64,000 bases of DNA from Selaginella moellendorffii (taxonomy: Eukaryota; Plantae; Lycopodiophyta): assembly GCF_000143415.4 (NCBI RefSeq), contig NW_003314315.1:682001-746000 (forward strand), written 5' to 3'. A program made the position numbers and the translations under genes. Positions 16,795-59,598 of this stretch are shown piece after piece. Numbering within the stretch: position 1 is the stretch's first letter; every line of letters begins with the position of its first letter. Below the pieces are notes generated by a model. It saw only the letters and a list, made by a program, of their open reading frames with translations, did not search any database and was not told the DNA's origin.

Positions 16795-19645
16795 TTGAGA
16801 TGGGGTCCGAGATTGAGTTCGAGATCGAGTCCAAGACCGAGTTCGAGTACTAATATAGGTCAAGGGGTGAAAGCCCAAAACGTGCATCTCCCCGGGGGGG
16901 GGGGGGGGGGGGGTTGTAGGGGTTCCAAAAGTGTAGTAGGGATAGTTAGGTCTAGGAACCAGTCTTGAAGGAACTCTCCAGTGGTGTTTCCAAACTGACT
17001 TGAGGTTGAGACTAGGGTCGAGGGGCCTTGGGTGGGAGTGAGCATGGTCTCGGGTGGTGCCGGAGGGGCCACCCAAGGAAGTGCTCAAGAGCAACTCCCA
17101 CTCCCGAAAGGGAAACCAACTGTAATGCTCCCGGCTCATGTGGAGTGGTGCCCCACTTGAGTACCTTGCGGCTTATTGGTCCTTGCCCTTCTTAGGGGCT
17201 TGGGCCTTCCCTTCGGGATGGAAGTGGGGGGGTAGAGGTACCCATACCGAGCCGTTAGGCCACGGTGTTTCGCCCCGGCTTCCCGAAGCATGTGTTGCAC
17301 CCAAGACTTGGGATTTAGAGGGTCTTATAATCAAGTCTTATGGTACCAAGGGAGGTTAGGAATTTGGAGGCTTGGTGTGCTTGGCTGCTTGTGCCTGTGG
17401 GGAGTGTAGCCGAACTTTAAGTCCAGTCTAACTCGGGGAGGGGGATTAAGAGAGATTTGGGAATCCGTGGATGAATGGCTAACACTCTATTGCTCATGCA
17501 GTGAGTAGCTGAAACCAAGTAGGACTAAGTAGGAGCTAGTACCATAGGTAGAAACCTTGGCGAGGAAACCCAGCTAAAGCCAAGGCAGTGTTAGTCGAAT
17601 AGACGAGGTAAGCTGGCAAATTGGAAAGGAAAAATTTATGGCTTACAATTTGGTATCGGAGCCTTTTCCTCAATTCTAGCGAAGGATAGAGGCGGATTGT
17701 TAGGAGATGGCAAAGGCAGGGTAGAAACGAACCAAGGTGGAGACGGAACCTCCTCCAGAGCTGGAGCCTCCAGTCGAACAAGAGGCTATGGATGAGGAAT
17801 CCTTGTATGAGGAGGACTCCAATGAGGAAACTTCCAAATAGGAATCCAGTGGTGAGGTTCGGTCGTCCAAGGCTCGATTGGACATTCTAGAAGGACAATT
17901 GGCATAGACCAATGCCCTATTGGAGACTCTCATATGCAAGCTAAAGCGTGACGAGAAGCGAAAGAAAAGACAAAAGAATGCAGATGCTGGCAGTGCAGAA
18001 GGTGCGGATCCTTCAATAGGGACTGAGGCAAAACCAAACAAAGTCGAACAGACCGAAGTGGAATCAGTCCCTCAGGCAGTTCCCAAGTATAAACAAAAGC
18101 CCCCACCGGTCTTCAAGGGAGTGAACGATTATAAAGTGGTGGAGGATTGGTTTTACGATATGGAGGATGACTTCTAAGCATTGCAATTATCGAGCTTGGA
18201 GAAGGTCCCATATGCAAAACCATACTTGGCAGATAATGCCAAGTCTTGGTGGAGAACGACAGAGGCCAACGAAGGACCGATGGCCACTTGGGAAATGATG
18301 AAGGCGAGGAATCGCACGACTTACATTCCTCCGAATGCTACTCTGCATCTAAGAGACGAGCTGAATAAGCTGAAGCGGACCAGAACCATTCAGGAGTATG
18401 TGAATGGGTTTATGGCAAAGAAGATACTTGTCATGGACATGGGGGATATGGATGCGTTCCATGCCTTCATATCATGCTTGCAAACCTGGGCTCGTAGTGA
18501 GGTGATGCGTTGAAACCCGACCAACTACAAGGAAGCATTGGATGCGGCCATTAAGGTGTATCAACGATAACTTACGAAAGGGGAACACGATGGGGTCAGG
18601 GTCCACGTTTAGCAAAGGGGCCAAACCAAGGGGAATGTATAGCAAAGGGAAATTCAAGAAGAGTTTCTTTAAGAATGAGTCCTCAGGGTTCCAGAAAGGC
18701 AAATCTGGTGGCCAATGAGCAAGTACATGGGGGAGTCAAGCAAAAAGAGATAAACCCACGGATAAGAAGGTCAAGTCAGTTAATAGTGTGGGAAACAACA
18801 TATACTACAACTGTGGTGAAGTGGAACACTTTTCGAGGGAATGTCCTTACCCGAAAAAGGCCAGAGCCAATATGCCATTAAGTCGGGTGAAATCCAAACT
18901 AAGGTATGTGATCCAGTCCCCTAACTCAAAGTTACTCATTACACGAGCAACTTTGGTAGAGAGTCGTTCGCAACATTTACTAACCCTCCGAGGGAAGCTT
19001 GAAGGTAGCTTTGTTAAGATCCTTATTGATACGGGTGCTTCAGATAATTTTGTGGCTCCGACAAGCCGGACTATGGGTGCAGCGGCTGGGCGAATCAAGG
19101 ATTATAGAGTTTGTTCAAGATAGCCAAAGCACCGATGAGGTACTTCAACAAGCGAGAGTCGAAGTAGGGACATGAAATTAGAAATGGATTTCACCGTGTT
19201 CGACATGGCGGGATTTGATGTGATCTTCGAGATAGATTAGTTCAATTGGTTCAATTGGTACCGGACAAGGTAGGAACCTTGTGGTACTAGCGAATACCCA
19301 AGGAAGAAGATCCAGGGTGGAGGCCCAAGATCTAAAGGTAGGGCAATGCAAGGCCAAAGATTCCTGCCTAAACCTAGTGTCCACAAGAGGACAACTCACT
19401 ACAGGGACTAAGGCAGCATTTTTGTGCTTACTCTCGGTGAAGAGTGACAAAAAGACGGGAATAGAAGTAGTACCTTTAGTGATCCAGCGGGTGTTGGACC
19501 AATTCCAGGATACCATGCCAAAGGAGTTACCGGTGGGGTTGCCCCCTGCATGACCGATAGAACATAAAATTGAGCTGGTCGAGGGTGCTGAGGTGGTGGT
19601 TTATGCCCCCTATCGTTTGAAGGAAAAGGAACTTGAGGAGCTCAA

Positions 19646-19983
19646 TATAACGTATGTGGTTTTGACCTTTATCCTATGGTGATTTACCATAGGATAACAC
19701 CACGAAGCGGAACCTAAACCCTCCATGTGCCACGTGTCATATGCCACGTGTCCAAAGGATAGTGGTATGGAACCCGAGGTTCAAAACCTTGGGCCACTAA
19801 ATGAAGGAACGGTGCCAAACTCCCAAGCATGGAGCCAAGGAGTGACGGAACCGAACCACGAACCAACTCCCGAGCATAGAGCCCAAGGAGCAAAGGGACA
19901 GGAGTTTGGAGCGACTTGGAATAGTCCTGGAGCAACCAGCATCCCAATGCCAGGACCAGCACATAAAACGGAGCCAAACGGAT
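19646..19983. mobile_element. LTR-like fragment (family D) inserted at the start of RT of element B
   Basis: Pol homology stops at EEL (19645); homologous to 4250-4533. Confidence 0.65.
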
Positions 19984-21231
19984 TGTAACGCACCTTATCT
20001 CTCTCCCTTAAGCCAACTAAAAAAGGGGCAATTGCTTGATGAGAGAGCTCTTAGTGGCTATTTTATCCCTATTTATCCCCCAAGGTTCTAAGGATCCACA
20101 GTGACAGTATATCTAAATCTCATCCCATGATCACATGCGCTACACTCACCCCCCCTTTAGAGATGTTAATATCCTCATTGACTATTGATTAACAACCCCT
20201 ACTAAGCCCCCTTTAGAGATGTTAATATCCTCATTGACTATTGATTAACAACCCCTACTAAGCCAAGGGGAACCAACACCTCCATTTCCGCACTAAATTT
20301 ACCAATCCTTCCATTGTGTAGACTAGTTATTCCATGTGAGGCAACTAGTCATTCACACGTACCACAGTCTCACGGTGGATACTTTTGCCCGTGGATACTC
20401 CACACAAGAGGAAGGACGTACGCATGGATGCCCAATACGTACGATTTCAAATTTAGGGGTAAGAATATACCTTGCTCAAGGGTATATTATATTTTTAAGT
20501 AGCCACTAATAAATGGGAATCGAACCTATGCCATTTGCTCCAATACCAACTATAGCGCACCTTATCTCTTTCCTCTTAAGCCAACTAAAAAAGGGGCAAG
20601 CTTCAAGACCACGCTTCTGCTGCGCCACTCTGATTTCGCGCGTTCCATGAACCATTTACATTTGGCCTTTCTAGGTACTAAGCCTATCTAAATCTCATCC
20701 CATGATCACATGCGCTACACTCACCCCCCCTTCAGAGATGTCAATGTCCTCATTGACTATTGACTAACAACCCTTACTGAGCCAAGGGGAACCAACACCT
20801 CCATTTCCGCACTGAATCTATCAATCCTTTCATTGTGTAGACTAGCTATTCCATGTGAGGTAACTAATCATTCACCCGTACCGCAGTCCCACGGTGGATA
20901 CCTTCGTCCGTGGATACTCCACACAAGAGGAAGGACATACGCATGGATCCCCAATATGTACGATTTCAAATTTAGGGGTAGGAATATACCTTGCTCAAGG
21001 GTATATTATATTTTTAAGTAGCCACTAATCAATGGGAATCGAACCCGTGCCATTTGCTCCAATACCAACTATAGCACACTTTATCTCTCTCCCCTTAAGC
21101 CAACTGGAAAAGGGGCAATTGTTTGATGAGAGAGCCTTTAGTGGCTATTTTATCCCCATTTATCCCCCAAAGTTTCAAGGATCCACGGTGACAGTATATC
21201 CAAATCTCATCCCATGATCATATGCGCTACA
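19984..21231 (-). mobile_element. Tandem-array TRIM: three ~161-bp LTRs and two ~350-400-bp non-coding internal domains
   Basis: LTRs at 19984-20144, 20551-20719 and 21070-21231. Minus-strand PBS tggtattggagc after LTRs 3 and 2; PPT aggggggtgag before LTRs 2 and 1. Confidence 0.9.
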
Positions 21232-22369
21232 AAAGAGAAGTTGAGGAAGGCTCTCGTGTTGGCGTTACCAGACTTTGGTAAGGACTTTGAGGTAGAAACG
21301 GATGCTTCGGACTTTGTGTTGGGTGCAGTTTTGAAGCAAGACAACCATCTAGTAGCGTTCTTCTCAAAGAAGTTGAACAAGGCTTAACAGAAGTGGCCTG
21401 CCCATGCGAAGGAATTGTTTGCAATGGTCAAGATGCTCAAGGAGTGGTGACACTACCTTGGGAAACACTTCAAGGTTTACACGGACAATATGGCAACGAA
21501 ACACTTCTTGTCACAGCCCAACTTGAGAGGGAAACAGGATCGGTGGGCCAATGCTTTGGCCAAGTTTGATTGCGAAATTCTGTACAAGCATGAGAAGAGC
21601 AACATCGTGGTGGATGCGCTAAGTCAAAAAGCGAGCTTGAAGTTGGCGATATCCAGCACAACAGCAACCTTTTGGGATGATGTGCAGATAGCATATGAGA
21701 ATGATAGTCTAGCACAAGAAGTGTTGCTAAGGAATCTAGAAGCACAGGAAGCTCACCAAAGAGGTGAGCTGCCAACAGAAGAGAAAACGGGCTATGTAGA
21801 ATGCAATGGACTCATCTATTACAAGTAAACAAGGGTGTATGTTCCAAAAGGGGAACTAAGGAAGGTAGCCTTAGAAGAGTGTCATGACAGACCTCTTGCA
21901 GGACACGGCAGAGTGCCCAAGATGATGGGCTTACTCAAGAGGAAGTACCATTGGCCAGATATGGCTAAGGACGTCCAAGACTATGTAAAGACATGTCCAA
22001 CATGTCAGCAGATCAAAGGCGTGATTAAGGCCAGTGGGGGCTTGTTACAAAGCATCCCAATTCTAGATCGTCCGTGGAAATGTCTTACAATGGACTTCAT
22101 CACGGGACTCCCCCCAAGTGAGGGGTTTGATGCGATATTCGTGGTGGTGGACCGATTTTCGAAGATGGCACATTTCATACCCACCACAACAGAAGTGGAT
22201 GCGGAATGTGTGGCAAAGCTATTCTTTGAACAAGTGGTTCGAGTGTGGGGAAGGCCAGAGGAGATCATCTCAAATCGGGATAAGATCTTCACCAGCAGGT
22301 TCTGGAGAACTCTCCTAAAACAGTATCGCACCAAGTTGAAATTCAACATAGCCTATCACCCACAGACAG

Positions 22370-22416
22370 GTATTGGGTATTAAGTTAAGTTGGATGGCAC
22401 TAACACTTCTTGACAG
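22370..22416 (+). other. Spliceosomal intron (47 bp) in the integrase core
   Basis: ACAG|GTATTG...CACTAAC...TTGACAG|AT; removal restores HPQT-DG(Q)TERVNRQLEDYLRSYV. Confidence 0.85.
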
Positions 22417-22834
22417 ATGGATAAACAGAAAGGGTAAATAGGCAGTTGGAGGATTATTTGCGAAGCTATGTCTCCGGAGACTAGATTGATTGGGTAAGTC
22501 ATTTGGGACTTGTGGAAATGTGCTATAACAACTCACCACACTCAAGTATCGGGGTGAGTCCATGGGAAGTCATCAATGGGCGAGCTATTGAAGGTCTTGT
22601 GGAACTCGGCATGGCCGAGTATCATAGAGAGTTACCCGCAGTGGAGGCATTCACAGTGGAAAGACTCAACATTTGGAATCTAGTGAGGGATTCCTTGGAA
22701 CAAGCTCAACAAAGGCAAACCAAGTATGCGAATCAGAAGCGTTAGGACGTAAAGTTCCAACTTGGGGAGAAGGTGTGGCTGAACACCAAGAACTTAAGGC
22801 TACCAAGTGGGATTAGCCAAAAGTTGACTCAAAG

Positions 22835-22885
22835 GTAAGATGCATGTATTCTTGGAAATGAACTAATCTTGAGTTCCTTAAGCAG
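22835..22885 (+). other. Spliceosomal intron (51 bp) before the integrase GPY/F motif
   Basis: AAG|GTAAGA...ACTAAT...GCAG|GT; removal restores KLTQR-FVGPY; the unspliced frame hits TAA immediately. Confidence 0.85.
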
Positions 22886-22945
22886 GTTTGTGGGGCCTTA
22901 CGAGATTGAGGCACAAATCGGTAAAGTGGCTTACCATCTCCGACT

Positions 22946-23368
22946 NNNNNNNNNNNNNNNNNNNNNNNNNNNNNNNNNNNNNNNNNNNNNNNNNNNNNNN
23001 NNNNNNNNNNNNNNNNNNNNNNNNNNNNNNNNNNNNNNNNNNNNNNNNNNNNNNNNNNNNNNNNNNNNNNNNNNNNNNNNNNNNNNNNNNNNNNNNNNNN
23101 NNNNNNNNNNNNNNNNNNNNNNNNNNNNNNNNNNNNNNNNNNNNNNNNNNNNNNNNNNNNNNNNNNNNNNNNNNNNNNNNNNNNNNNNNNNNNNNNNNNN
23201 NNNNNNNNNNNNNNNNNNNNNNNNNNNNNNNNNNNNNNNNNNNNNNNNNNNNNNNNNNNNNNNNNNNNNNNNNNNNNNNNNNNNNNNNNNNNNNNNNNNN
23301 NNNNNNNNNNNNNNNNNNNNNNNNNNNNNNNNNNNNNNNNNNNNNNNNNNNNNNNNNNNNNNNNNNNN
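22946..23368. other. Assembly gap (N run); second gap at 31706-32118
   Basis: N bases. Confidence 1.
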
Positions 23369-23808
23369 GGAGACTACACTCAACTCCCCACGAGGATGTC
23401 GAATCCGTAGACATATTCTACAGAGGTTGGGTTCGAGTCCCAACCCCCTAGTAAAGCAAGGCTGGGTTCAAGTCCCAACCCCATACTAGGGCATGGTGGG
23501 GTGAGGGGTATAGGGACACCTATATTCTGTTGTTATGGGCTCTTGGCTGGGGAGGCTAACTTAGGCACACCGCTAAGTGGGGGGATGCCCCTAAAGACAT
23601 GGTTAACAAGTCATAGGATTAAAAAAAGACGTTCGATGTGGGCATCAAATTTCTTTTATGGGTGGTGGAGTTGTAAGGAACCAACTCCCTGAGGTGTTGT
23701 AGGCTAAAGGATCCCCGAAAGCATGACCGAAATGATAAAGAGTTCATCGGATGGGACCGAGTCTGAGATCGAGTCCAAAACCGACTTTGAGACCAAGTTC
23801 GAGATTGA

Positions 23809-26800
23809 TGTGAGACACAAAATCCCTAGACCCCAAAGTGGAGCCGGAAGGTTGCCACGTGGTAGTGGCCGAAGCGAAAGCCAAACGAACGTAACACGTT
23901 TGGACTAAAAGCTCCAACTTGAAAGGTCGACAGCGGGAGTGGAACTCCTAACAAAGGGCTTGAGGAACAAGCACGAAGCGAGCAATAAGTGAGACTCCAA
24001 AAAGGCACCCAAAAGGACCAACACATGACACGTGGAAGTGTCCGAGATGGAGTCCGAGATGGACCTGAGTTGGAGTCCCAGATGGAGTCCGAGGTGGAGT
24101 TCGAGGTGGAGTTCGAGATGGAGTCCGAGATGGACCAAGACGGAGTCCGAGATGGAGTCCGAGGTGGAGTCCAAGATGGAGTCTGAAGTGGAGTCCTAGA
24201 TGGACTCAGACGGAGTCCGAGATGGAGTCCGAGATGGAGTTCGAGATGGACCGAGACGGAGTCTGAGATGGAGTCCGAAATGGACCGGAACGGAGTCCGA
24301 GATGGACCTGAGATGGAATTCGAGATGGAGTCCGAGAAGGACCTGAGATGGAGTTTGAGGTCGAGACCGAGACCGGGACCGAGACCGGGACTGAGACCGA
24401 GACCGAGATCGAGACCGGGACCAAGACCGAGACCGAGGCGGAGGCCGAGACCGAGCTCGAGCCCGAGTCCGAGTCCGAGTCTGAGTCCGAGGCCGAGTCC
24501 GAGTCCGAGTCCGAGTCTGAGTCCGAGTCCGAGTCTAAGTTTGAGTTTGAGTCTGAGAGGGTGAAAGCCCAAAGCGTTCATCTCCCAGACCCTGGGGGGT
24601 TTGGTGAGCTCCAAAAGTATAGTAAGGGGGAGGACTGCAGTGGAGCCAATTTAGCCAAGAAAGGCCAGTTTGGCCCAAGAAGGCCAAACCCAGTGTTGGG
24701 TGATGAATTGATCACTGGGAAGTCCAAGACTAGAGTGAATACGGACCGACAAGTGGGGTAGCTTAGTGAAGTGTTCAAGAGCTGGCTCTAGTTCCCCCGG
24801 GAGATCGATTGGCCGATACTCCCAGTCCAAGTGTGGGTGGCACTACCTACTTGGATACTAGGCGTGGCTCAACGAAACCTCGCTCTAAACCCATGGCTAG
24901 AGCATCTAAAGGCGGAAGGTGGGGAGAGTACCCACGGGGCTCGCGTAGGCCCACGGTGTTCCGAAATGTTGCCCCGGAGTCCCAAATGGGGGAAAGGAGG
25001 AGGAGCAGTCCTCTAGTGTAGTGACTAAGGATACAGTCACATGGTGAGGAAGTCCCAGAGGACCATGGGACTTAGTGGTCGGGCCTGTGGGCCTTGATCT
25101 AGTGGCAGTGTCGATGGACATGGCCATGGACAGAAAAGGGACTTGGTAGGAACTGAAAAAGGGATATTGGGGAAGGTTATTCCCTATGTCTGTAGGCATC
25201 CTAAGGATGCTAAGGAGTGGATCTGGGTTGACCACTCGTGGACGGATGGCCTAGTCTTGGAGAGATGGGATTGTGATGTAAGTGGTATTGGACCACTAGT
25301 GCGGCAAAGGTGAATGAGCATGGCCTTAATGTAACGGGCCGATATGTCAGTGGTACCTTTGGGTGTCAGTCTTGGGACCAGACACGTGGAGCACTTGGAC
25401 CAAGTGCAACGGTTGAGTGGCACGGGGGCCATTCTTGGGGCTAGCAAGTCCCCAAGTCTGGAATAGGATTTATGGAGGTTGTGAGTGAGACTCCTCCAAG
25501 TGGTCGGAGGTGTGGTTAAGTGACTAAAGTAGAATGGAAACTTTAGTCGCTTACAACTTGGTATCGAAACTGTTCCTTAGTCCAACTTTTATTGGTGCTC
25601 AAGTATACCACCATTGATATTGGCATCGGAAGGTCCTAGGAGTGGGCCTATCCTTAAGGAGTAGCATGTTGAGAGGACATGGCTCTCCACTCAAGTTCAT
25701 GCGTGAACTTGGGTGCGATGTGGTGGATAGAAAAGGGGCCAGTAAGGGAACGACTTTGGGATCTTGGGAACAGTATAAGGGTTTCCTCAGAGAGTTGAGG
25801 ATGTGATTTAGATGAGCGTTTGACTTAGCAAACTGGCTGATGTAGTTGTGGTAAACAACTACAGTTGGGATCACGAGAAAGATGCAGACTCCAAAATAAT
25901 AAAGGAGTCACAAGATAATCCGCACATAGTTGAGGCTGGTGCTCATGAATTTGAAACCGTAATTGATGACCATGAGAGGTCAAGTACGGATGAGGGCAAG
26001 AGCCCTTGAAATGGTAGTTGGGGCTATCTTTTATAAATGCTGGAACGAACCCAAGGAGTTGAGGGTGTGCTCAAAGAATGAGTCAGCATTCTCATCATGG
26101 GGACGGATAGTCCTAAGGGGCAAAAGGCAGCCCACAGAGAACGGGAAATAATGAAGTGTTAGAGTAACACTTGCAAGATGGTCCTTATGAGTAGGACATG
26201 AATACATGAAGTTGTATTCGAGTGAGCTGGCACCTCAAAAATAGAACCTTATGGGTCGTTGGTTTAGTGAAGTCCAAAAATGCTGGATGACTCAAGTAGG
26301 GTCAAAGAATGGTCCTAAGGGATTGGTTGAAGCATTTAGACTGAGGTGTATGCTGCCCCATGAGGTATGGGGAGGATCATAAGATCCAAGTATGAGAACA
26401 GGAGATATTTCATTGATGGCAGAATGTGCCATACTAAAGTTGTGGGAAAGATGTTCCCAGAAAAAAGCAACTTTGGCCCAGAGTTGGGGACAAACATTAT
26501 AGTGCGGTGCTAACGGATAGTTAGCATGAGGCACAACTATATTGGTCTTGGCAAAGACCTAGACACTAATAAGTAGTGTCATAAGGATAGGCTCATGGGG
26601 CCAATGGTGTGGAGATACCAAATGTGCCAAAGTGTGATACCTTAAGGTTATGTTGGTGGGTTCATAAGAACCCCTTGCCAAAGGGAATCCCAAAGGAAAT
26701 GGGAATGGTATAGCATAAGTTGGAAGGCATGTGGTAGAGTGGGGTGACCAAAACAATTATGGAGGTGTAGAAGCACCAACAATGAGTTGTAGAACTTGAC

Positions 26801-29800
26801 AACTATGAGGCAACTAAGCAAAAGGTGCAAGATAATTGGTCAAACTAGTAGAAGGTAGTTACCCAAGATTTCTTAATGGCATAAAGAAGTTAGATATACC
26901 CTTACGAGGGATAAATTGCTTATGTTGCGATATAGTAAGTCAATGTCATAAAAGGGAATGCTCATTGTCAAACAGGCCATCATTTGGGACACCAAAACAC
27001 TCTAGGACACCGGGAGGTGGTGTTTGATGTCGCGAGGGCAATAGATAAAGCCCAAGGGAATAAGTCCCTAGCGAATGATGGATAGAAGGTGCTATTCAAA
27101 TGTCCAAGGTTGCGGAGACGGGAGAAGACTGTCAACCCAAATTGGACAAAGCCAAAGATGGAATTTTGGCAAGGCTAGTGATGGGCATATAAAGGCACAT
27201 AAGCAACAACATTAATCCTGGTGTGTGGGATTATAAGGTGAGCATACCTGGATTGAGGAACCACTCCCTAGGCTATTGGGTAGGTTCATCCCTAAGAATA
27301 CTTGCTAAGGCATGATAGAAAGTGCGAAGCTATCCTCCTAGTTTGGAGGAGAATGACCGAAGGAAAGGTGTGAAGCCAAAAGCAAGTAGTAAGGGGATAA
27401 AACCAAATTATAGAAATCGAAGGGCATAACCAAGGGTGGTTATGCCAATTGAGAGTGGAGAATCAAGTGGGGGCTCGAGGGTGTTGTTGCTAGCAACTGT
27501 GATGCCATGAAGAGTCTAAAATATGGAATTGTCTATACTAGACTATATGGCAACTAGAAAGCTTGCGAAAAGGGAGGCCTTAGCAAACTAAGGGACAAAG
27601 TTTCTTCAAGGTTCCCAAAGACGATTCTAGGTAGCTTAGTACCTAGAAAGGCCAAGTGTAAATGGTTCATGGAACGCGCGAAACCAGAGTGGCGCAGCAA
27701 GAAGCATGGTCTTGAAGCTTGCCATGAGGCAAGGCTATCAAGGTTAGGGAAGTAGTTCCCAAGTGTTCAAAGAGAGGGCTTTGAATAAAGGTCGATGGTC
27801 AAGGACTTTCACGCATATGCAGGAACCATGTTACGGTGGTCGGAGGACTTGCCAAGCGAGATTGGCAAGACGGGGGAACAAATACCCGAGTTGAAGGTGA
27901 TAACTTCAAAAGGGTGGGCCAGGGGGCCAAGCATGGAGGAGTCCATGCATGATCACAGACATGTCAAGTGAGAAGACTTGGTAGTGTGGAGGAACTAGGT
28001 TCCTAAGCTGTGATCTATAGCGCGCTTTAAATATAAGTTGGTGCACCGGCGTGGGGAGTCACGCCAGGCATCCAGGGTGATGCCGTCTGTAGATGCATAT
28101 ACGGAGGTTGGGTTCGAGTCCCAACCCTCTAGTGCTTGGGTTAGAGTCCCAAATCACTAGGGCGTGGTGATGGTTTGGAATATGAGGACACTCATATTTC
28201 GGTGGTCATAGACTCTCAATGAGGAGACTGGTTTGGGCACACTGCCAAGCGAGGGATGCCTCGGAGTCATGATGCACAGTTAGATTGCTTAGAGTGAAAG
28301 CTCGGCATATCTAACTTGAACACTTTGGTGCAAAGGGCACCAAGGACGTGGTGAATGAGATGGGGACACCCAGTCTTAGTTGCTATGGATCCTTGGCCGG
28401 AAGGGCTGGCTTGGGCGCACCGCCAAGTGTGGGGGATGCCCCCGGGGTCATAGTCAACAACTTAGAAGAGTCTGGAAGACCTAGTTCCTATTGGTAGACC
28501 TATTAAGGGGTCAAGATGATATCACTAGGTGATCTTGTGGCTAAACAAGGACAAGGTCTTTGTTTGGGTTAAGGGATATGATTCCTAATTCAAAGTGTTA
28601 ATTTGAACTATTGATAATGGTGTGGCTTGGTCAAGGTGACCAAGTGGGAAGAACACCTATGGGAAATGAGCTATATCACTGCTATGGCATAGAAAGTTTG
28701 AAGAAAGTAGTCTCTATAAGAGATCCGAGGGTCTCAAAAGTTAGACCATGGATAGAGCCCACAGTAGAAAATGCTAAAGAGACGTACTAGGGGTGAACAC
28801 CCTCTGGACCTGGCAAAGCAAAGTGTTTGCTTGGAACTGAAAGGAAACCTCGAAAGTGGAAGTAGCGATCCTATGTTGCTGGGTGCAACAATCAAGGATA
28901 GGAGCAAAAGACTAGTGGCTAAGAAAAAAGCCATGGGAATCATGAGAAAGAATCCAAATGGCAAAGTTAGGCCAAGAACACTAATGTGTTGGGTGCTAAC
29001 AGATTGTGGGAAAGGCAATATTTCCCCAAGGGTGGATTCCCAACCGCTCCAATTTGGCAAAAGTGGATGCTCCAAAGGGGGGAGCGGTAAGGTAGCCAAA
29101 TAATAGGGCCATGGGTAGCCCTAGCACCAATTATGATAACTGGAACTTAGTGCCAAAGGTGGCACGATATCGAAGAAAGGATGATAGTACCCTCAATTTA
29201 AGAACTTCCTAGGATAAGGAAGTGGAGTTGCACCATGTGCAACGTAAGGTATCGAAGACATCTAGGAAATTGACTGTGAGAAGTCAAAGTTAAAAGTTCC
29301 AAGTGCAAAGGTTATGTCCATGGAATCTGAGACTACTCGAGAATGAGTAGTGGAATTGAGTTAGAGAGGGTGTCTCTAACCGGTTTAGCGGGAACTAAAC
29401 CAATAAAAGGGAGCAAACCACCCCAGGTGGTCGAGTGAGTCTCTAGGTTGGAGAGACTATGCTCCTTAGAGGATGGACAAGTCATGGTGAGCCTTCGGTG
29501 TCAAACCATAGACAAATATTGGCTGGGTGCCAAGGATGGAAATGGTAATACATGCGGATGTTACTTTATAAAAGAGTTTACTGTTCGATGAGGACATCGA
29601 ACTTCGTCTATGGGTGGTGGAGTTGTGAGACACAAAATCCCTAGGCCCCAAAGTGGAGCCGGAAGGGTGCCACGTGGTAATGGCCGAAGCGAAAGCCAAA
29701 CGAGCGTAACACGTTTGGACTAAAAGCTCCAACTTGAAAGGTCGAGAGCGGGAGTGGAACTCCCAACAAAGGGCTCAAGGAACAAGCACAAAGTGAGCAA

Positions 29801-30223
29801 TAAGCAAGACTCCAAAAAGGCACCCAAAAGGACCAACACATGACACGTGGAAGTGTTCGAGATGGAGTCTGAGATGGACCTGAGTTGGAGTCCGAGATGG
29901 AGTCCGAGGTGGAGTCCAAGATGGAGTCCAAGATGGAGTCCGAAGTGGAGTCCGAGATGGACTCAGATGGAGTCCGAGATGGACTCAGATGGAGTCCGAG
30001 ATGGACTTCGAGATGGACCGAGATGGAGTCCGAGATGGAGTCTGAGATGGACCGGGACGGAGTCCGAGATGGAGTCCAAGATGGACCCGAGATGGAATTC
30101 AAGATGGAGTCCGAGAAGGACCCGAGATGGAGTCCGAGGTCGAGACCGGGACCGAGACCGAGACCGAGACCGGGACCAAGACCGAGGCCGAGACCAAGGC
30201 CGAGACCGAGTCCGAGCCCGAGT

Positions 30224-30264
<41 letters not shown>

Positions 30265-31363
30265 GCCGAGTCCGAGTCCGAGTCCGAGTCCGAGTCCGAG
30301 TCCGAGTCCGAGTCCGAGTCCGAGTCCGAGTCCGAGTCCGAGTCCGAGTCCGAGTTCGAGTCTGAGAGGGTGAAAGCCCAAAGCGTTCGTCTCCCAGACC
30401 CTAGGGGGTTTGGTGAGCTCCAAATGTATAGTAAGGGGGAGGACTGCAGTGGAGCCAGTTTGGCCAGGAAAGGCCAGTTTGGCCCAGGAAAGGCTAAACC
30501 CAGTGTTGGGTGATGAACTGACCACTGGGAAGTCCAAGACTAGAGTGAATACGGACCGACAAGCGGGGTAGCTGTGAAGTGTTCAAGAGCTGGCTCTAGT
30601 TCCCTCGGGAGATCGACTGGCCGATGCTCCCAGTCCAATTGTGGGTGGCACTACCTACTTGGATACCAGGCATGGCTCAACGGAACCTCGCTCTAAGCCC
30701 ATGGCTAGAGCACCTAAAGGCGGAAGGTGGGGAGAGTACCCACGGGGCTCGCGTAGGCCCACGGTGTTCTGAAATGTTGCCCCGGAGTCCCAAATGGGGG
30801 AAAGGAGGAGGAGCAGTCCTCTAGTGTAGTGACTAAGGATACAGTCACATGGTGAGGAAGTCCTAGAGGACCATGGGACTTAGTGGTCGGGCCTGTGGGC
30901 CTTGATCTAGTGGTAGTGTCGACGGACATGGCCATGGACAGAAAAGGGACTTGGTAGGAACTGAAAAAGGGATATTGGGGAAGGCTATTCCCCATGTCTG
31001 TAGGCATCCTAAGGATGCTAAGGAGTGGATCTGGGTTGACCACTTGTCGACGGATGGCCTAGTCTTGGAGAGACAGGATTGTGATGCAAGTGGTATTGGA
31101 CCACTAGTGCCGCAAAGGTGAATGGGTATGGCCTTAGCATAATGGGCCGATATGTCAGTGGTACTTTTGGGTGTCAATCTTGGGACTAGACACGTGGAGC
31201 ACTTGGACCAAGTGCAACGGTTGAGTGGCACGGGGGCCATTCTTGGGGCTAGCAAGTCCCCAAGTCCGGAATAGGATTTATGGAGGTTGTGAGTGAGAAT
31301 CCTCCAAGCCATTGAAAGTGTGGTTAAGTGACTAAAGTAGAATGGAAAATTTAGTCGTTTACA
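23809..31363 (+). mobile_element. Complete non-autonomous LTR element of family A (LARD-like), nested in the 3' LTR of B; TSD ATTGA
   Basis: LTRs 23809-25555 and 29624-31363; PBS tggtatc at 25559; PPT atgggtggtggagt; attga on both sides. The 4-kb interior has no long ORF. Confidence 0.93.
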
Positions 31364-32314
31364 ATTGAGTCCGGGATCGAGTCTGAAGCTGACTTGGAGA
31401 CCGAGTTTGAGATAGATTCGAGATTAGGTCCGAAGTTGAGTCCGAGATTGGGTCCGAGATCGAGTCCGAGACCGAGTCCGAAGTCGGGTCCAAGATGGAG
31501 TCCGAGTCCGAGATCAAGTCTGAGACCGAGTCCACGTACTAATACAGGTCAAGGGGTGAAAGCCCAAAGCATGTGTCTCCCCGGGGGGGGGGGGGGGGGG
31601 GCCTTAAGGGTACTTCTCATTTTTTTCTGGCTAAAGGGGTCTACGAAACAATTCTATGAGAAACAACACATCTTATCTTCAAAGTGTACTCCACGTAAAT
31701 CCCGANNNNNNNNNNNNNNNNNNNNNNNNNNNNNNNNNNNNNNNNNNNNNNNNNNNNNNNNNNNNNNNNNNNNNNNNNNNNNNNNNNNNNNNNNNNNNNN
31801 NNNNNNNNNNNNNNNNNNNNNNNNNNNNNNNNNNNNNNNNNNNNNNNNNNNNNNNNNNNNNNNNNNNNNNNNNNNNNNNNNNNNNNNNNNNNNNNNNNNN
31901 NNNNNNNNNNNNNNNNNNNNNNNNNNNNNNNNNNNNNNNNNNNNNNNNNNNNNNNNNNNNNNNNNNNNNNNNNNNNNNNNNNNNNNNNNNNNNNNNNNNN
32001 NNNNNNNNNNNNNNNNNNNNNNNNNNNNNNNNNNNNNNNNNNNNNNNNNNNNNNNNNNNNNNNNNNNNNNNNNNNNNNNNNNNNNNNNNNNNNNNNNNNN
32101 NNNNNNNNNNNNNNNNNNGAGATTTGGGAATCCATGGATGAATAGCTAACGCTCCATTGCTCGTGCAATGAGTAACTGAAACCAAGTAGGACCAAGTAGG
32201 AGCTAGCACCATAGGCGGAAACCTTGGCAAGGGAACTTATCTAAAGTCAAGGCAGTGTTGGTTGGATAGACGAAGTAAGCTAGCAAATTAGAAAGGAAAA
32301 ATTTATAGCTTATA

Positions 32315-35012
32315 GTGGTGAATGAGATGGGGACACCCAATCTTAGTTGCTATGGACCCTTGGCCAAAAGGGCTAGCTTGGGTGCACTGCCAAGTATGGG
32401 GGATGCCTCCGGGGTCATGGTTAACAAGTTAAAGGTCTGGAAGACCTAGTACCTATTGGCAAACTTGTTCAGATGACCAAGGTTAGATCACTAGGTGATT
32501 TTACGGCTAAATAAGGATGAGGTCCTTATGAGGTTAAGGAATAAAGTTCCTAGTTCAAAGTGTTGATTTGAACTATTAATAATGGTGTGGCTTGGTCAAG
32601 GTGACTAAGTGGGAAGGACACCTAAAGGGAAATTAGTTGTGCTAGTACGATGGTATAGCGAGTCCAAAAAAGTAGTATCTAGGAAAGACCTATAGGAGGG
32701 TCACAAAGTTGGGCCATTAATGGAGCCTCTAGTAGAAAATGCTAAAGAGACCTACTAAGGGTGAGCACCCTCTGGACTTGGCAAAATAGAACTTTTATCA
32801 TGGAACCAAAAAGATACCTTGAGAATGGAGGTAATAATCTTATGTTGCTTAGTGCAATAATTAACGAATAGGAGCAAAAGACTAGTGGCCAAGTATGGGC
32901 CATGAAATTCATTGAAATGAATCCAAATAGCAAAGTTAGGCAAGGAACACTAATGTTTTGGATGCTAACGGATTGTGGGAAAGAAAATGTATTTCTAAAG
33001 ATGGATTCCCAAATGCTTTAATTTGGCAAAAGTGAAAATTCCAAGGGAGGGAGCGGCAAGGCAGCCAAATGATAGGGCCGTGAACAACCCTAGCACAAGT
33101 GATGGAAAAATGAAATTTAGTGCCAAAAGTTGACATGAAATAGAAAAGAGAATGATGCCCTCAAGTAGAGAACTTCCTAAGATGGGGAAGTGGAGACTAC
33201 ACAATATGTGCAATGTAAAATGTTGGAAACACCCAGGAAATTGACTTTGAAAAGTCAAAATTAAAAGTTTCAAAGTGCAAAGGTTATATTGATAGAAACT
33301 AAGACTACTCGAGATTGAGTAGTGGGATTGAGATAAAGGTGTCTCTAACGAGTTTTAACGAGAACTAAATGAATAAAAGGGAGAGAACCACCCCAAGTGG
33401 TCGTATGAGTCTCTATGTTAAAGAGATTATGCTCCTTAGAGGATGGAAAAAGCATGGTGAGCCTTCAGTGTCAAACCATTGACGAATATTGATTAGGTGC
33501 CAAGGATAGAAAGGGTAATACATGTTGGTGTTACTTATAAAAGGGTTTACCATTCAATGAGGACATCGAACTTCATTTATGGGTGGTGAAGTTGTGAGAC
33601 ATAAAATCCTTAGGCCCCAAAGTGGAGCCGAAAGGGTGCCACGTGGTGGTGGCTGAAGTGAAAACCAAACAAGTATAACACGTTTGGACTAAAAGCTCCA
33701 ATTTGAAAAATTGAGAGCGAAAGTGAAACTCCTAACAAAGGGCTCGAGGAATGAGCACGAAACAAGCAGTAAATAAGTCTCTAGAAAAAGGACCAACACA
33801 TGACATATGAAGGACCTGAGATAGAGTCCAAGATGGAGTTTGAGATGGATTCGAGATGGACCCGAGATGGAGTTTAAGATGGACCCGAGATAGAGTCTAA
33901 GATGGAGTCTGAGATGGACCCAAGATGGAGTCTGAGATAGAACCGAGACTGAGACCGAGTTCGAGTCCGAGTCCGAGTCTAAGTCCAAATATTAATACAG
34001 ACTGTTAGGTGAAAACCCAAAGCGATCATCCCTCGAGGGGGGAGGGGGGGGGGGGCGCTACAAGGGGTTCCGAAAGTATAGTAAGGAGAGTGTGGGGGTT
34101 AGATCCTAGTAGTGCCAGTTTGGCTAGGAAAGGCCAGTTTAGCCCAGGAAGGCTGTACCCAAGTGTTGGGTGATGAGATAACCACTGAGAAGTCCAAGGC
34201 TAGAGTGAATATGAATTAATAAGCGGGGTAACTTAGTGAAATGTTCAAAAGTCAGCTCTAATTCCCCTAGGAGATTGAATTGTCAATGCTCCCAATCCAA
34301 CTATGGGTGGCACTACCTACTTAGATACCTAGCATGGCTCAATAAAACCTTGCTCTAAGCCCATGGCTAAAGCACCCAAAGGCAAAAGGTGGGGAGAGTA
34401 CTTATAAGGCTCATATAGGGCCATGGTGTTCTGAAATGTTGTTCCAAAGTCCCAAGCTATGGAAAGGAAGAGGAGTGGTCCTTTAGTGTAGTGACCAAGG
34501 ATACAGTCATGTGGTAAGGAAGTCCAGCGGACAATGGAACTTAGTGGTCAAATCGGTGGGCTTTATCCCAGTGGTAGTGTTGGCAAACACGGCCATCGAT
34601 AGAAAATGGACTTGGTGGGGACTATAAAAGGGATATTGGGGAAGGTTATTCCCCATGTCTGTGAGCATCCTAAGGATGTTAAGGAGTGAATCTAGGATGA
34701 TCACTCATGGACGGATGGCCTAATCTTTAAAAGACAGGATTGTGATGTAAGTGGTGTTAGACTATCGGTGTGACCAAGGTGAATGGGCATGGCCTTAGCA
34801 TAACAAGTTGAAATGTCGATGGTACTTTAGGGTTCAATCATGGGAGGAGCACTTGGACCCAGTGCAAGGGTTAAATGGTATGGATGCCATCCTCAGGGTT
34901 AGCAAGCCCCAAGTCCTAAATTGGACTTATGAAGGTTGTGAATGAGATTCCTCCAAGTGGTCGGAGGTGTGATTAAGTGACTAAAGTAGAATAGAAAAAT
35001 TAGTCACTTCTA
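32315..35012 (+). mobile_element. 3' half of an older family-A element (interior plus 3' LTR 33593-35012)
   Basis: Colinear with 28348-31363; begins with TSD gtggt; followed by ataat. Confidence 0.9.
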
Positions 35013-35364
35013 ATAATGAAGAAACTAATGAAAAGGTATTCTTTTTATAGTATTTATAACTATTTAATTTTTCTTTATGTAGGCTTGGAGTGAATCACAT
35101 GGCAATTCATGTTTACTATATTTTCAATATCCTTTCTAGAACTTGAGGAGGGAGAAACTACCATACTATTCCAAAAAAAGATAATAATTATGAGGAAATA
35201 AAGTATAAAATGATGAATAGTTTGATTCCATAGCTAGATATATAGATTAATATTGCCAATCTTATTTTACAAATAGAGGGGTACAAAAGGTAGTTTTTAA
35301 AGCTCTCAGAAGTGTGTTTTTCTATCAGAAGTGGACAAATTATAGAAATGGTTAGAAAATTAAA

Positions 35365-48470: not shown

Positions 48471-49660
48471 TTTCTCAAAAGCTAAACTTCTTAAGAGATG
48501 TATTAGCTCAAGTTTTGCAGAAGTGCTATTCAAGATAAAGATGAGCCAATAGATAACCCACTCCCTAATGCAAGTCAATGAGTTTTTCATAGTATTTCTT
48601 TGTTACTATTTTTCAGCATCTTTTGTTAGGATGAGGACAATGAGAAAACCAATGAAAAGGTTTTCCTTACACAATATTTGTAACCATTTAGTTTTTCTTT
48701 CTGTAGGCTTAGAGTGAATCACATGGCAAAAGAGACATATGGAGAAGAAGCCACCATACCATACCAAAAAATGATAATGAATAAAAGCTAATTTGATAGT
48801 GTTCAATTGTAGCTTAGTTGTATATATAGATTAATATTTCCTAGCTTAATTTTAAAAATACAAAATGTAATTTTTAGAGCTCTTTGAAGTGTGTTTTTTC
48901 TATTAGAAGTGAACTAAACTATATATTTATTGCTATTTTTTTATAGGCATCCTAAGGAAAATATCAAGAAAATAGTACTTAATGCAAACCAAGATGTAGA
49001 AATAAAAACCTACACTACCACTAGCACAAATGGTAGATGAAGAGTGAATGGCAAATGTGTCTAATAATACAAATGGAAAGAAGGTTTATTACTTCTTGTG
49101 TTATATGTATTAATTATGACTAACTTCTATGGCTTATAGACTATATCCATGCCGGTAGAAGCCATCATTAACATGGTTGAAGATGCAGCAGCCACAAATA
49201 TGACAAGGGACTCTTTGGTTGTATGTATTATTGTATTATGTAATAATTTTATTTAGCTTTATAAGAAACATTGGCATAATTACAAGACAATGAAACAGTC
49301 TAGCAAATGTTCTTTTGCTAAAAAGCTAATGCTTAGAGAGGAGGTTTGCCTAATTTTTAGAGGACCTAAATTATACCACTTACCTTTCTCACCTAGAAAA
49401 CAATATTATATTATGAGGTTCAATTTATACATATGCTAATATTAGTATAGTGGGATTTTGATTTGCATTGTTTAAATTTCTCTTATTCCTAGAACTTTTT
49501 TATTTTTTCCCTTTTTTTCATTTTTCATTTTATTTATCTTCATGCTATAATAACATACTCCTCCTTTGACTTTAGAGCAACAATTGATGCAATTGCTTAA
49601 TACAAAATGGCTATAGTTGACCAACTACACTCAATTGATAGTAGCATTCATGGCATATAG

Positions 49661-49948
49661 ATGCTTTATTTCGTTAAAGTGGGACTTTTCATTATCCCAC
49701 TTATGGTGTGTGGCCACATGCCATTTTTATAACAACAATAAAAAATTGAAGTTTTAACTTTATAATTTATAAATTAAAAACTTTTCATATGATTTTGTGT
49801 TATAATATTGTGAAATATAAAAAAATAAATTAAAAAACTGATAAAAATATTAATAAATATTAATTAAGTACTAGGAAATGGCATGTGGACACATGCTAAT
49901 TAATGTCCCACTTTACTGAATAAGTCCCACTTTAACGAAATAAAGCAT
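49661..49948 (-). mobile_element. MITE copy 2, TSD ATAG
   Basis: TIRs as in copy 1; atag/atag; empty site visible in E gag (~42115-42135). Confidence 0.95.
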
Positions 49949-53900: not shown

Positions 53901-54168
53901 CTACATCAACTATCATTTATGAAATGATATGACAATTCCAAATATGTACCCTCTTCCCCACACTGATAATTTTCTAAACCATTTTAGGTGAAGTCATTAG
54001 TTCACCAACTTGAATCTTGCTTATTGGTATTGGCAAGTTCTAATGGCTAAAGAGGATATTCCCAAGACTATTTTCTATATATCATTGGTTTATACAAGTT
54101 CTTGATGATGCCATATAAATTGAGTAATACTTCAACAACTTTTCAACAAATAATAGAGAAGGTTCTTT

Positions 54169-54456
54169 ATGCTTTATTTCGTTAAAGTGGGACTTATTCA
54201 GTAAAGTGGGACATTAATTAGCATGTGTCCACATGCCATTTCCTAGTACTTAATTAATATTTATTAATATTTCTATCAGTTTTTTAATTTATTTTTTTAT
54301 ATTTCACAATATTATAACACAAAATCATATGAAAAGTTTTTAATTTATAAATTATAAAGTTAAAACTTCAATTTTTTATTGTTGTTATAAAAATGGCATG
54401 TGGCCACACACCATAAATGGGATAATGAAAAGTCCCACTTTAACGAAATAAAGCAT
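54169..54456 (+). mobile_element. MITE copy 3, TSD CTTT
   Basis: TIRs; cttt/cttt; empty site in E RT (~40180-40200). Confidence 0.95.
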
Positions 54457-57520: not shown

Positions 57521-57805
57521 TATTGCAAATGTGACTTTAGGGGGCTGGGTAGTTTTTGAGTTGAGGTCAAGTCAATGAAAGTTAACAAAAGTCAAAGGAA
57601 GTCAATACAATCCCCTAACTAGTGAAAGTTTAATGGCACTACCTTAGTTCGTCCCGAACCAAGAATTTTTAACATAAAATCTAGGTGTTTAAGGTATTCC
57701 ATAAGCTCATGTAGATTATTGGTTCGACATGAATTAATCTTTTAGTCTACAAAGAAAGAAAATTATATATTAAACAATATAATTTATATTAAAATCAGAA
57801 TATAT

Positions 57806-59598
57806 TCAATCTTCTTCTGCTTCCATATCTAGAAAAGCAGAAATGGGTATAGTGGAATACTCCTTTACTATAGGCTCGTGTTGTATGTAATGTTGTGCCA
57901 TACGTTCAACATAAATAGGTAAGTGGAATTGACTTCTGTCCATATAATCATTCATATCATCAAGATCAAGTGTGTGGACTAAAACACTGTGTGTGATAAG
58001 TGTAGACATAATGACATAGAAACATTTGAGAATAAATATTATAGATTATTTCAAGCACTAACATCACCTGTCGCAAAATCTCCTAAGAATGTCCTTAAAG
58101 GCACCCTCCTTCTCAAGTGCAAAAACAGCTCGGCTTGTCTCTTTCACTGCCTGCACCATTAACCCAAATCCTACTATAGCATCAAGCACAATCCCCTTTG
58201 GGGGACAGAATAACTCCAACAAGATTTGCATAGCCATGGCTGAACGATGTCAATAGCTAGGGAACGCTGGGTGAAGAATGTCCAAGTCAATCACATTTGG
58301 GATGATGTTTGTAGAGTTGTCATATCCTGGTAAAGCAAGAGTAGCATGCTCGTTAGCTCATGTGGCATTACACCGGTTCCCAATGTGGCATAGAGTATGG
58401 TAGTTCCAGGAATAAACCTGGAAAAAAAATAGAATAGAGTTAATTTGTAAATAAAAAAGTCACAGACCTTTCACTTCTACCCACTAGTGCCTTTTGTGTC
58501 CACCGCCATACTCAAAAGAAGGCAGCCAAATGAAAACTTGACAAATCCATCATTGTTGTCAGCCAAGTATGTGAGAAGGCTGTCCCACATTAGAGAGTGG
58601 GGAAGGATCATGACAACCACATCCTCGTATGTCATAAAGCTGCTCGCTGTAGTGCACCTGAATTTGGAGCCGAACTCCAAGCCCGTTGCGCTACGAACGA
58701 GGGTTCGGTACAATCCCACGAGCACTAGCTCCCCGTATCCAGCACCTGCACGAAAAATGGTGTCAGACGGAGTCTGGCACAATTTTGGCATACCGGTGGC
58801 CTAATGCGAGAAGGAGGGTACTCCACTGACTAGAGCAACATGGAGCTTGGGCTTAAACCCAAGCCGGACGCAGAACAAGGAGCGACACAGCCCAGCGGGA
58901 GCCAAACTAATGTCTCAGGTGGTCGGACATGCATTCCAACCACTATCCCTACTATACATTTGGAACCCCCCACAGCCCCCCCCCCCTTGAGGAACACACG
59001 CTTTGGGCTTTCACCCCAAGCCACCCTTAGTACCAGGAGTTAGTCTCTGGGACAACCTCGAAACTTACTAAATATGGAATGGCCTTAGATTGCGAATTTG
59101 GACACGGGACAAACATCATTGTGTTCAGGCCGACCTCTACATTCCGTAGATATGCTAAATAAGCAAATCTAAACACTTTCCATAAATAGCATTTGAGACC
59201 AAAATGAGACTAACACAAAGGGTGTGATAGCGAGGGTGTTTGGCAAACACGGTAAACTATCATCCAGAGATATTGAGGGACTAGTCTCAATATGCGAGGG
59301 TTCTTGCCAAGCCAGTGCAAGACAGAGCAAAAGAGAACTAACAAGCCAGGCCAAGTATGCTTGGCTAAATAGACACTTAGGAATTCCTTCCTTATGCTCA
59401 TCCGGCCAAGTACAGATGCCAAGTCCAGTTTACTAACACTTGGACAAGAGGGGCTAATAAAGGGAACCAGCAGTACCGACCTCCTGCTGTCGTGGCAGTA
59501 AGGAAAATGTGTCCGTAAGGACTGGCCGACAAGTATCTTTCGATACCCGAAGTCACATTTGCGACACTCGCAACCTTTAAGGCTTGGGAAATGTGTTG
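57806..59598 (-). pseudogene. 3' part of the ParB-like/amino-methyltransferase gene (SAM-binding motif I), interrupted by solo LTR-C
   Basis: QHISQALKVA|SSFMTYEDVVVMILP... reads through after removing the LTR and one TSD copy. HRSAMAMQILLELFCPPKGIVLDAIVGFGLMVQAVKETSRAVFALEKE (~58250-58108) resembles the N6_N4_Mtase C-terminus. Ends FLDMEAEED* at 57806. Confidence 0.72.
58648..59566 (-). mobile_element. Solo LTR family C (919 bp), TSD CTCGC
   Basis: tgtagtgcacc...tttgcgaca flanked by ctcgc/ctcgc. Confidence 0.93.

What the first reader, a model, noticed from the sequence alone, without database searches (positions are those of the whole stretch)
16795..59598. ~42.8-kb inversion reconstructed from four independent split features
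Seen: inverting 16795-59598 simultaneously does four things. (a) It joins the MTase halves in frame (DPPLQGDTPSWNVL*A + QHISQALKVASSFM). (b) It completes the 5' LTR of element B (59840-59599 + 16795-17647). (c) It brackets B with TSD GTGGT (59841-45 reverse complement / 32315-19), a site present once in intact A at 28348. (d) It reunites the halves of the old A element with TSD ACAAT/ATAAT, whose two flanks are contiguous in the paralogous empty site at 48530-48910. Neither breakpoint is at an N gap and the two breakpoint regions (gene vs LTR) are non-homologous, implying end-joining rather than LTR-LTR recombination.
Basis: seen in the sequence. Interest (0 to 1): 0.75.

Follow-up and report, generated by a model that had tools for sequence, protein, structure and literature searches.

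The report
Base-exact 42.8-kb inversion in nested retrotransposons
A 42.8-kb stretch of this plant (Selaginella-like) chromosome has been flipped by two clean breaks, one in a decayed methylase-like gene and one in a retrotransposon's terminal repeat; the case is very well documented, but it is an ordinary kind of rearrangement.

Summary
All four split features were re-derived with tools.

(a) A 627-aa Selaginella moellendorffii protein (P0006) aligns to the + strand up to 16794 (aa 1-437). It continues on the - strand from 59598 (aa 438 onward), in frame, with no residue lost.

(b) The gypsy element B's 5' LTR pieces, rc(59840-59599) and 16795-17647, are colinear with its 3' LTR.

(c) B is bracketed by the target-site duplication (TSD) GTGGT. 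That site occurs once in the intact copy A.

(d) The two halves of the old A element carry flanks ACAAT/ATAAT. These flanks are contiguous at an empty paralogous site (48637-48641). The two old-A LTRs are each other's best match among seven copies.

The breakpoints share no homology and lie inside contigs, not at the N gaps. The best reading is a real two-break inversion rejoined by end joining, later than B's insertion.

Caveats:
- The size includes 836 estimated N.
- Linkage of the two junctions runs through two scaffold gaps.
- The LTR break sits in a 12-nt tandem array, so exactness on that side is only to about one unit.
- The gene is a pseudogene, and its 'MTase' label rests on sub-threshold Pfam hits.

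Ordinary biology, unusually well resolved.

The parts
15007..16794 (+). G1: 5' part of an N6_N4-MTase-like pseudogene (equivalent to P0006 aa 1-437). In-frame stops at 16645-47 and 16789-91. Ends at the left breakpoint.
   Evidence: tblastn of P0006; local alignment ends at aa 437
16795..17647 (+). Distal piece of element B's 5' LTR. Starts inside the 12-nt tandem array and ends in CA at 17647. The tRNA-iMet-type PBS follows at about 17651-17663.
   Evidence: 17452-17645 matches 32119-32312 at 87.6%
17648..23671 (+). Internal region of B (Ty3/gypsy-like): gag 18181-18510, zinc knuckle 18788-19120, integrase 21835-22380. Holds N gap 22946-23368. The PPT region 23631-23671 is shared with family A. 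No PR/RT/RH was detected.
   Evidence: Pfam; PPT/PBS comparison
23672..23808 (+). First 137 bases of B's 3' LTR, cut off by the insertion of intact A.
   Evidence: 93% identical to rc(59840-59704)
23809..31363 (+). Structurally intact element A (LTRs 23809-25556 and 29624-31363, about 90-93% identical), nested in B's 3' LTR. TSD ATTGA at 23804-08 and 31364-68. No long ORF; shares PBS and PPT with B, so probably a non-autonomous relative.
31369..32314 (+). Rest of B's 3' LTR: tandem array, G19 tract, N gap 31706-32118, and the last 196 bases.
   Evidence: 32119-32312 matches 17452-17645
32315..35012 (+). 3' half of old element A (A positions about 4540-7555). Begins with the GTGGT target site of B (32315-19). 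3' LTR at 33592-35012.
35013..35017 (+). ATAAT, the 3' copy of old A's target-site duplication.
48526..48940 (+). Paralogous empty site. Both flanks of old A are contiguous here around a single ACAAT (48637-48641).
57806..59598 (-). G2: 3' part of the MTase-like pseudogene (P0006 aa 438 to the end), starting at the right breakpoint. Interrupted by a solo LTR at 59566-58648 (TSD GCGAG). Two in-frame stops in the exon 58420-58079.
59599..59840 (-). Proximal 242 bases of B's 5' LTR (TG start at 59840; 12-nt array at 59603-59757).
59841..63888 (-). 5' half of old element A (A positions 1-4544). Ends with GTGGT (59845-59841). 5' LTR at 63888-62896.
63889..63893 (-). ACAAT, the 5' copy of old A's target-site duplication.

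Best explanation
This is a real chromosomal inversion of 16795-59598 (42,804 positions, 836 of them estimated N).

Order of events:
1. An A-family LTR element inserted at an ACAAT site.
2. The gypsy-like element B inserted into it at GTGGT.
3. At some time, a younger A copy inserted into B's 3' LTR at ATTGA.
4. After step 2, two double-strand breaks occurred. One was in an exon of an MTase-like gene, between the codons equivalent to P0006 aa 437 and 438. The other was in the 12-nt tandem array of B's 5' LTR. The four ends were rejoined with swapped partners by non-homologous end joining, with no base lost on the gene side and at most about one repeat unit changed on the LTR side.

Shown: the reciprocal complementarity of both junctions and the lack of homology between them. 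Inferred: the breaks themselves, the end-joining pathway, and the timing relative to the gene's decay.
For: - Gene halves abut at P0006 aa 437|438, in frame and on opposite strands.
- The LTR pieces are colinear with the 3' LTR. Total array length is 213 nt in the split LTR and 221 nt in the 3' LTR.
- GTGGT brackets B and is single in intact A.
- Old A's halves meet at A positions 4540-4544. Its flanks are contiguous at the empty site.
- Old A's two LTRs are each other's best match: 85.5% against at most 82% to five other copies.
- The longest shared string between the 300-base gene and LTR breakpoint flanks is 11 nt, and it is not at the LTR break.
- Both junctions lie inside gap-free contigs: 1-22945 and 32119-64000. 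The second contig alone already holds old A's two halves in opposite orientation.
Against: - No reads, no second haplotype and no other accession could be consulted, so neither junction is physically verified.
- The link between the contig carrying junction 1 and the contig carrying junction 2 runs through two N gaps. The 94 bases left of gap 2 do not match the 5' LTR.
- The LTR break lies in a tandem array, so its register is ambiguous by multiples of 6-12 nt.
- Base-exact rejoining at both junctions is less common than small deletions for plant end joining (my own knowledge, not tested here).
Confidence: 0.85

Rival explanations
1. Assembly artefact: the two junctions are chimeric joins, or the scaffold links contigs wrongly, and no inversion exists in the plant.
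For: The segment contains two N gaps of estimated size. The 94 bases left of gap 2 have no counterpart in the other LTR. The region is dense in repeats, with seven A-family LTR copies. The public S. moellendorffii assembly mixes two haplotypes (PMC3680112), if that is the source of this window.
Against: Neither junction is at a gap. A false join needs shared sequence, and the joined partners share none. Two independent chimeras would have to be exactly reciprocal, to the codon in a unique gene and in register in the LTR. The gap-free contig 32119-64000 by itself shows old A's halves inverted relative to each other, and it contains the LTR|gene junction.
Confidence: 0.07
2. A real inversion, but made by replication template switching (MMBIR/FoSTeS type) or by breakage at a hairpin-prone site, not by plain rejoining of two random breaks.
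For: Read across the break, the gene sequence is a 9-bp inverted repeat with a 6-nt spacer, and the break falls at the spacer/right-arm border. Only 0.5% of window positions lie in such repeats. An 11-mer ending 1 base before the gene break recurs at positions 23-33 of B's LTR; 14 of 2000 shuffles reach that length. The other break lies in a tandem array.
Against: There is no microhomology at either junction itself, and no templated insertion, duplication or deletion, which template switching usually leaves. The 11-mer is about 210 nt from the LTR break and is ordinary coding sequence (N-V-L, conserved in P0006). Both coincidences were found after the fact and are not independent of each other.
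Confidence: 0.06
3. There was no single event. G1 and G2 are remnants of two different paralogs, and the two LTR pieces and two A halves belong to different element copies that only look complementary.
For: The MTase-like gene has several paralogs in S. moellendorffii (P0002 stands for four accessions on five contigs). Families A and B are repeated.
Against: This requires four independent truncations that complement each other exactly: aa 437|438, the LTR register, A position 4540-4544 with the shared GTGGT, and the ACAAT flanks contiguous at the empty site. It also requires old A's LTRs to be mutual best matches by accident.
Confidence: 0.01

Closest known systems
Two-break chromosomal inversions repaired by non-homologous end joining (natural plant inversions; inversions induced with two nuclease cuts)
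   Same: Reciprocal junctions, no homology between the breakpoints, nothing duplicated, and essentially nothing lost.
   Different: This one is natural. It can be reconstructed without an outgroup only because one break hit a nested retrotransposon stack and the other a gene that has a homolog. Both joins appear base-exact, which is cleaner than usual.
Inversions by ectopic recombination between inverted repeat copies (LTR-LTR or TE-TE, NAHR)
   Same: The region is full of inverted LTR copies that could have served as substrates.
   Different: The breakpoints are a unique gene exon and an LTR tandem array, with no shared sequence beyond an off-site 11-mer.
Inversions by alternative (reversed-ends) transposition of cut-and-paste elements
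   Same: They also give inversions of tens of kb in plants.
   Different: No transposon terminus lies at either breakpoint, and there is no target-site duplication at the junctions. The nearest element end (the solo LTR at 59566) is 32 bases away and has its own intact TSD.
Nested LTR-retrotransposon stacks used as a relative clock
   Same: Old A is older than B, and B is older than the inversion. LTR identities follow the nesting: old A about 85%, B about 83-93%, intact A about 90-93%.
   Different: Here the stack dates and orients a rearrangement and not only insertions.

Membership tests
Balanced two-break inversion | Both junctions are reciprocal: each pair of separated ends restores a continuous feature | tested here: met
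   Gene aa 437|438; LTR colinear with the 3' LTR; old A and its flanks restored
Balanced two-break inversion | No net gain or loss at the junctions | tested here: inconclusive
   Exact on the gene side. On the LTR side the arrays total 213 and 221 nt and the register is ambiguous by repeat units.
Balanced two-break inversion | Junctions exist in the organism's DNA (reads, PCR) | not testable with these tools
NAHR (repeat-mediated) inversion | Inverted homologous repeats at the two breakpoints | tested here: not met
   Longest common string between the 300-base gene and LTR flanks is 7-11 nt
Alternative-transposition inversion | Transposon termini at a breakpoint and a TSD at the new junction | tested here: not met
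   The breakpoints lie mid-exon and mid-LTR
Ty3/gypsy LTR retrotransposon (element B) | Two LTRs (TG..CA), PBS, PPT, 5-bp TSD | tested here: met
   The 3' LTR ends in TA, not CA (mutated).
Ty3/gypsy LTR retrotransposon (element B) | gag, PR-RT-RH, then IN in that order | tested here: inconclusive
   gag, zinc knuckle and Integrase_H2C2+rve were found in order. No PR/RT/RH hit in 19100-21830, which holds a roughly 520-bp macro-repeat.
N6_N4 DNA methyltransferase (Pfam PF01555) | Score above Pfam's gathering threshold | tested here: not met
   17.4, 20.2 and 13.8 bits against a cut-off of 26.7, matching model positions 169-219 only. PDB phmmer: modification methylase 2zie at E 0.35. The profile search found none.
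N6_N4 DNA methyltransferase (Pfam PF01555) | Motif IV (D/N/S)PP(Y/F/W) upstream of motif I FxGxG (beta-class order) | tested here: inconclusive
   The window has FFDPPL and then VGFG, in the right order once the inversion is undone. The homolog P0006 has FFDMPD and AGCG. The fold could not be checked: model pLDDT 45.

The most novel reading that the evidence does not exclude
The break positions may not be random. The gene break sits at the loop/arm border of a 9-bp palindrome. The LTR break sits in a 12-nt tandem array rich in short palindromes. Both joins are base-exact. Together these would point to structure-directed or enzyme-mediated breakage and exchange (hairpin processing, or topoisomerase-type subunit exchange) as the source of natural inversions in this genome.
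Probability: 0.08. Interest if true: 0.5.

Novelty: new member of a known kind. Interest (0 to 1): 0.3.

Why it matters
This is a clean natural example of an end-joining inversion whose ancestral state can be read from a single haplotype to the base. It needs no outgroup, because a three-level retrotransposon nest and a gene with a known homolog record it. It gives a relative date (after B's insertion). It also shows that one copy of a small lycophyte gene family was broken by the inversion, whether or not the gene was still functional at that time. It provides two ready PCR assays for a structural polymorphism. It does not change how inversions are understood.

Tried and rejected
1. I suspected that 23419-23670, which resembles A's interior next to B's LTR start, meant a second A|B junction and hence a duplicated composite or a misjoin at gap 1. 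Rejected: the similarity is a repeated 3'-UTR motif plus the PPT region that families A and B share. It is B's own 3' end.

2. I took 5027-5883 for a coding paralog of G2. Rejected: conservation is equal in all six frames. It is a copy of the solo LTR that interrupts G2.

3. I considered that the 11-mer next to junction 1 was filler DNA copied from B's LTR. Rejected: it encodes N-V-L, which is conserved in P0006.

4. I thought the 'gt' after the LTR was two extra bases that spoiled the frame. That was my own ruler error, corrected.

5. The word search with the 57-aa exon found only a 55-aa fragment. The full HMMER search was needed to get a full-length homolog.

6. The AlphaFold model of P0006 from a 6-row alignment had mean pLDDT 45, so no fold search was run.

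7. The profile search of the PDB gave nothing relevant.

8. The literature search found no paper on this locus.

Full report
**Source and layout.** The window is eukaryotic: 42.8% G+C, CpG observed/expected 0.51, two N runs at 22946-23368 and 31706-32118. It is packed with LTR retrotransposons (self-BLAST). The only relatives of its one recognisable host gene are proteins of Selaginella moellendorffii. I therefore take it for a Selaginella-like lycophyte. It is not human and not a crop. The N runs divide it into three contigs: 1-22945, 23369-31705 and 32119-64000.

**Gaps, tested first.** Both gaps lie inside element B, not at a breakpoint.
- Left of gap 1 is B's integrase region (Pfam Integrase_H2C2 and rve at 21835-22380).
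- Right of gap 1 (23369-23671) is B's own 3' end. Its last 41 bases match the polypurine-tract region of family A at 85%, and B and A also share the primer-binding site.
- Gap 2 lies inside B's 3' LTR. 32119-32312 matches the end of the 5' LTR at 87.6%.
- With the estimated gap, the 3' LTR measures 1083 bases against 1095 for the split 5' LTR.
- Order and orientation therefore fit one element, but continuity cannot be proven.
- The 94 bases at 31612-31705 have no counterpart in the 5' LTR.
- No reading frame is claimed across either gap. The ORFs listed over the gaps are artefacts of N.

**Element map.**
- Intact A is 23809-31363. Its LTRs are 90% identical by BLAST and 92.8% over ungapped columns. 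Its TSD is ATTGA.
That LTR is therefore 23672-23808 plus 31369-32314.
- B has gag, a zinc knuckle and integrase but no detectable PR/RT/RH.
- B's 5' LTR ends in CA at 17647 and is followed by a tRNA-iMet-type primer-binding site.
- Other A-family LTRs are solo copies, each with its own TSD: 12089-13860 (TTCCT) and 51841-53264 (GGCAT). A further copy at 55792-57520 carries a small insertion.

**Claim (c).**
- Read on the minus strand, old A's interior runs into GTGGT (59845-59841) and then B's LTR start at 59840.
- On the plus strand, B's LTR ends at 32314, followed by GTGGT (32315-32319) and old A's interior.
- Intact A has the two flanks contiguous around one GTGGT at 28348-28352.
- BLAST against intact A shows that the halves meet at A positions 4540-4544. 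62445-59841 (minus) covers 1901-4544, and 32315-33971 (plus) covers 4540-6204.

**Claim (d).**
- Old A's 5' LTR starts at 63888 (minus strand) after ACAAT.
- Its 3' LTR ends at 35012 and is followed by ATAAT.
- The reverse complement of 63889-64000 aligns to 48526-48641, and 35013-35360 aligns to 48637-48940. A single ACAAT lies at 48637-48641.
- Among the seven A-family LTR copies in the window, old A's two LTRs are each other's best match: 85.5% against at most 82%.

**Claim (b).**
- rc(59840-59704) is 93% identical to 23672-23808.
- Past the A insertion, the match continues in register into 31369 and beyond.
- 16798-16923 aligns to 31493-31611.
- The break lies in a 12-nt tandem array. Array totals are 213 nt in the split LTR and 221 nt in the 3' LTR.
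- At the join, the two pieces and the 3' LTR have the same length and differ by three transitions. Because of the array, however, exactness is safe only to about one unit.

**Claim (a).**
- Pfam gave only a weak N6_N4_Mtase hit on the exon 58067-58237 (minus strand): E 0.0046, below the cut-off.
- The word search with that exon, given by reference, found only a 55-aa fragment.
- Because that search cannot see longer proteins, I used the single full HMMER search with the same exon.
- It returned P0006 (627 aa, XP_024519109, S. moellendorffii), P0002 and P0003.
- tblastn of P0006 places aa 1-435 at 15007-16788 on the plus strand and aa 447-615 at 58647-58079 on the minus strand.
- The last G1 piece ends at aa 437. 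The ten codons from 59598 downward start at aa 438, a unique placement.
- The codon boundary is exactly at 16794|59598.
Exons were used one at a time by reference, and stops were read as X only inside scripts.
- The gene is a pseudogene. It has stops at 16645 and 16789, two more in the 58420-58079 exon, and a 919-bp solo LTR (59566-58648, TSD GCGAG) inside an exon.

**Mechanism.**
- The 300-base flanks of the gene break and of the LTR break share at most an 11-mer. There is no microhomology at either join, no duplication and no loss on the gene side. Two breaks rejoined by end joining fit best.
- The inversion is younger than B's insertion. Its order relative to intact A's insertion and to the gene's decay is unknown.
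- An assembly artefact is unlikely. Both junctions are inside contigs, the joined partners share no sequence, and the two joins are exactly reciprocal. The contig 32119-64000 alone shows old A's halves inverted.
- What does depend on the scaffold is the linkage of junction 1 to junction 2, and the 42.8-kb size.

**Two after-the-fact coincidences near the gene break.**
- The restored gene reads as a 9-bp inverted repeat with a 6-nt spacer, and the break is at the spacer/right-arm border. Only 0.5% of window positions are covered by such repeats.
- An 11-mer ending one base before the break recurs at positions 23-33 of B's LTR; 14 of 2000 shuffles reach that length.
- Both stretches are ordinary coding sequence conserved in P0006, and the two coincidences overlap, so I treat them as a lead only.

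**Housekeeping.**
- For the LTR comparison I skipped the small inserted element in one LTR copy inside the script.
- In one search the two LTR pieces were held apart by an N.
- The structure model of P0006 was too poor to use.

**Verdict.** This is a known kind of event: a new, very well resolved instance.

Noticed in passing
window 6170-6465, 49661-49948, 54169-54456, 55940-56227: Four copies of a 288-296-bp element, 97-99.7% identical to each other and in both orientations. One lies inside an A-family LTR and one inside a gypsy relic. It looks like a recently active MITE-type element.
   Followed up: no
window 59566-58648 (minus strand); related copy 5027-5883: A 919-bp solo LTR (TG..CA, TSD GCGAG at 59571-67 and 58647-43) sits inside an exon of the MTase-like pseudogene, 32 bases from the right breakpoint.
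   Followed up: yes
window 16780-16794 with 59598-59590: Read across the break, the gene sequence forms a 9-bp inverted repeat with a 6-nt spacer, and the break is at the spacer/right-arm border. Only 0.5% of window positions lie in such repeats.
   Followed up: partly
window 16783-16793; 23694-23704; 59818-59808: The same 11-mer occurs only three times in the window: next to the left breakpoint and at positions 23-33 of both B LTRs. 14 of 2000 shuffles reach this length. Unexplained, possibly chance.
   Followed up: partly
window 31612-31705: The 94 bases between the G19 tract and gap 2 in B's 3' LTR match nothing in the 5' LTR or elsewhere in the window. This may be an insertion hidden in the gap or a poor contig end.
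   Followed up: partly
window 16894-16913 and 31583-31601: G20 and G19 homopolymer tracts at the same position in both LTRs of B.
   Followed up: no
window 19984-21231; related 4078-4922: B's interior holds a roughly 520-bp macro-repeat (copies 91-92% identical) where PR/RT/RH should be. The repeat is related to sequence next to the other copy of the solo-LTR family.
   Followed up: partly
window 25545-25600, 29570-29635 compared with 17636-17690, 23618-23685: Families A and B have different LTRs but share the primer-binding site, the PPT region, a 3'-UTR motif and the 12-nt LTR array. A has no long ORF, so it is probably a non-autonomous partner of B-type elements.
   Followed up: partly
P0006, P0002, P0003, P0001 (relatives of window 15007-16794 and 57806-59598): The MTase-like protein has very few relatives. 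The 57-aa exon found four real relatives in all: three among 1.84 billion cluster representatives (all S. moellendorffii) and one unnamed Logan fragment in the word search. The motif-IV position reads DPPL in the window and DMPD in P0006, so the family may not be catalytic.
   Followed up: partly
window 37660-42647 (minus strand) and 49946-55785 (plus strand): A second gypsy family. One copy has 175-bp terminal repeats 97% identical, with gag, protease and RT. A decayed copy in the opposite orientation is pierced by a solo A LTR and by a MITE-type element.
   Followed up: no
window 43355-44992: A 545-aa ORF with internal tandem repeats (43535-44134) and no convincing Pfam match.
   Followed up: no
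window 48526-48940 compared with 35013-35360 and 63889-64000: The site that old A entered has a 75-82% identical paralog 13 kb away. The paralog has the look of a short exon between introns, so a local duplication predates old A.
   Followed up: no
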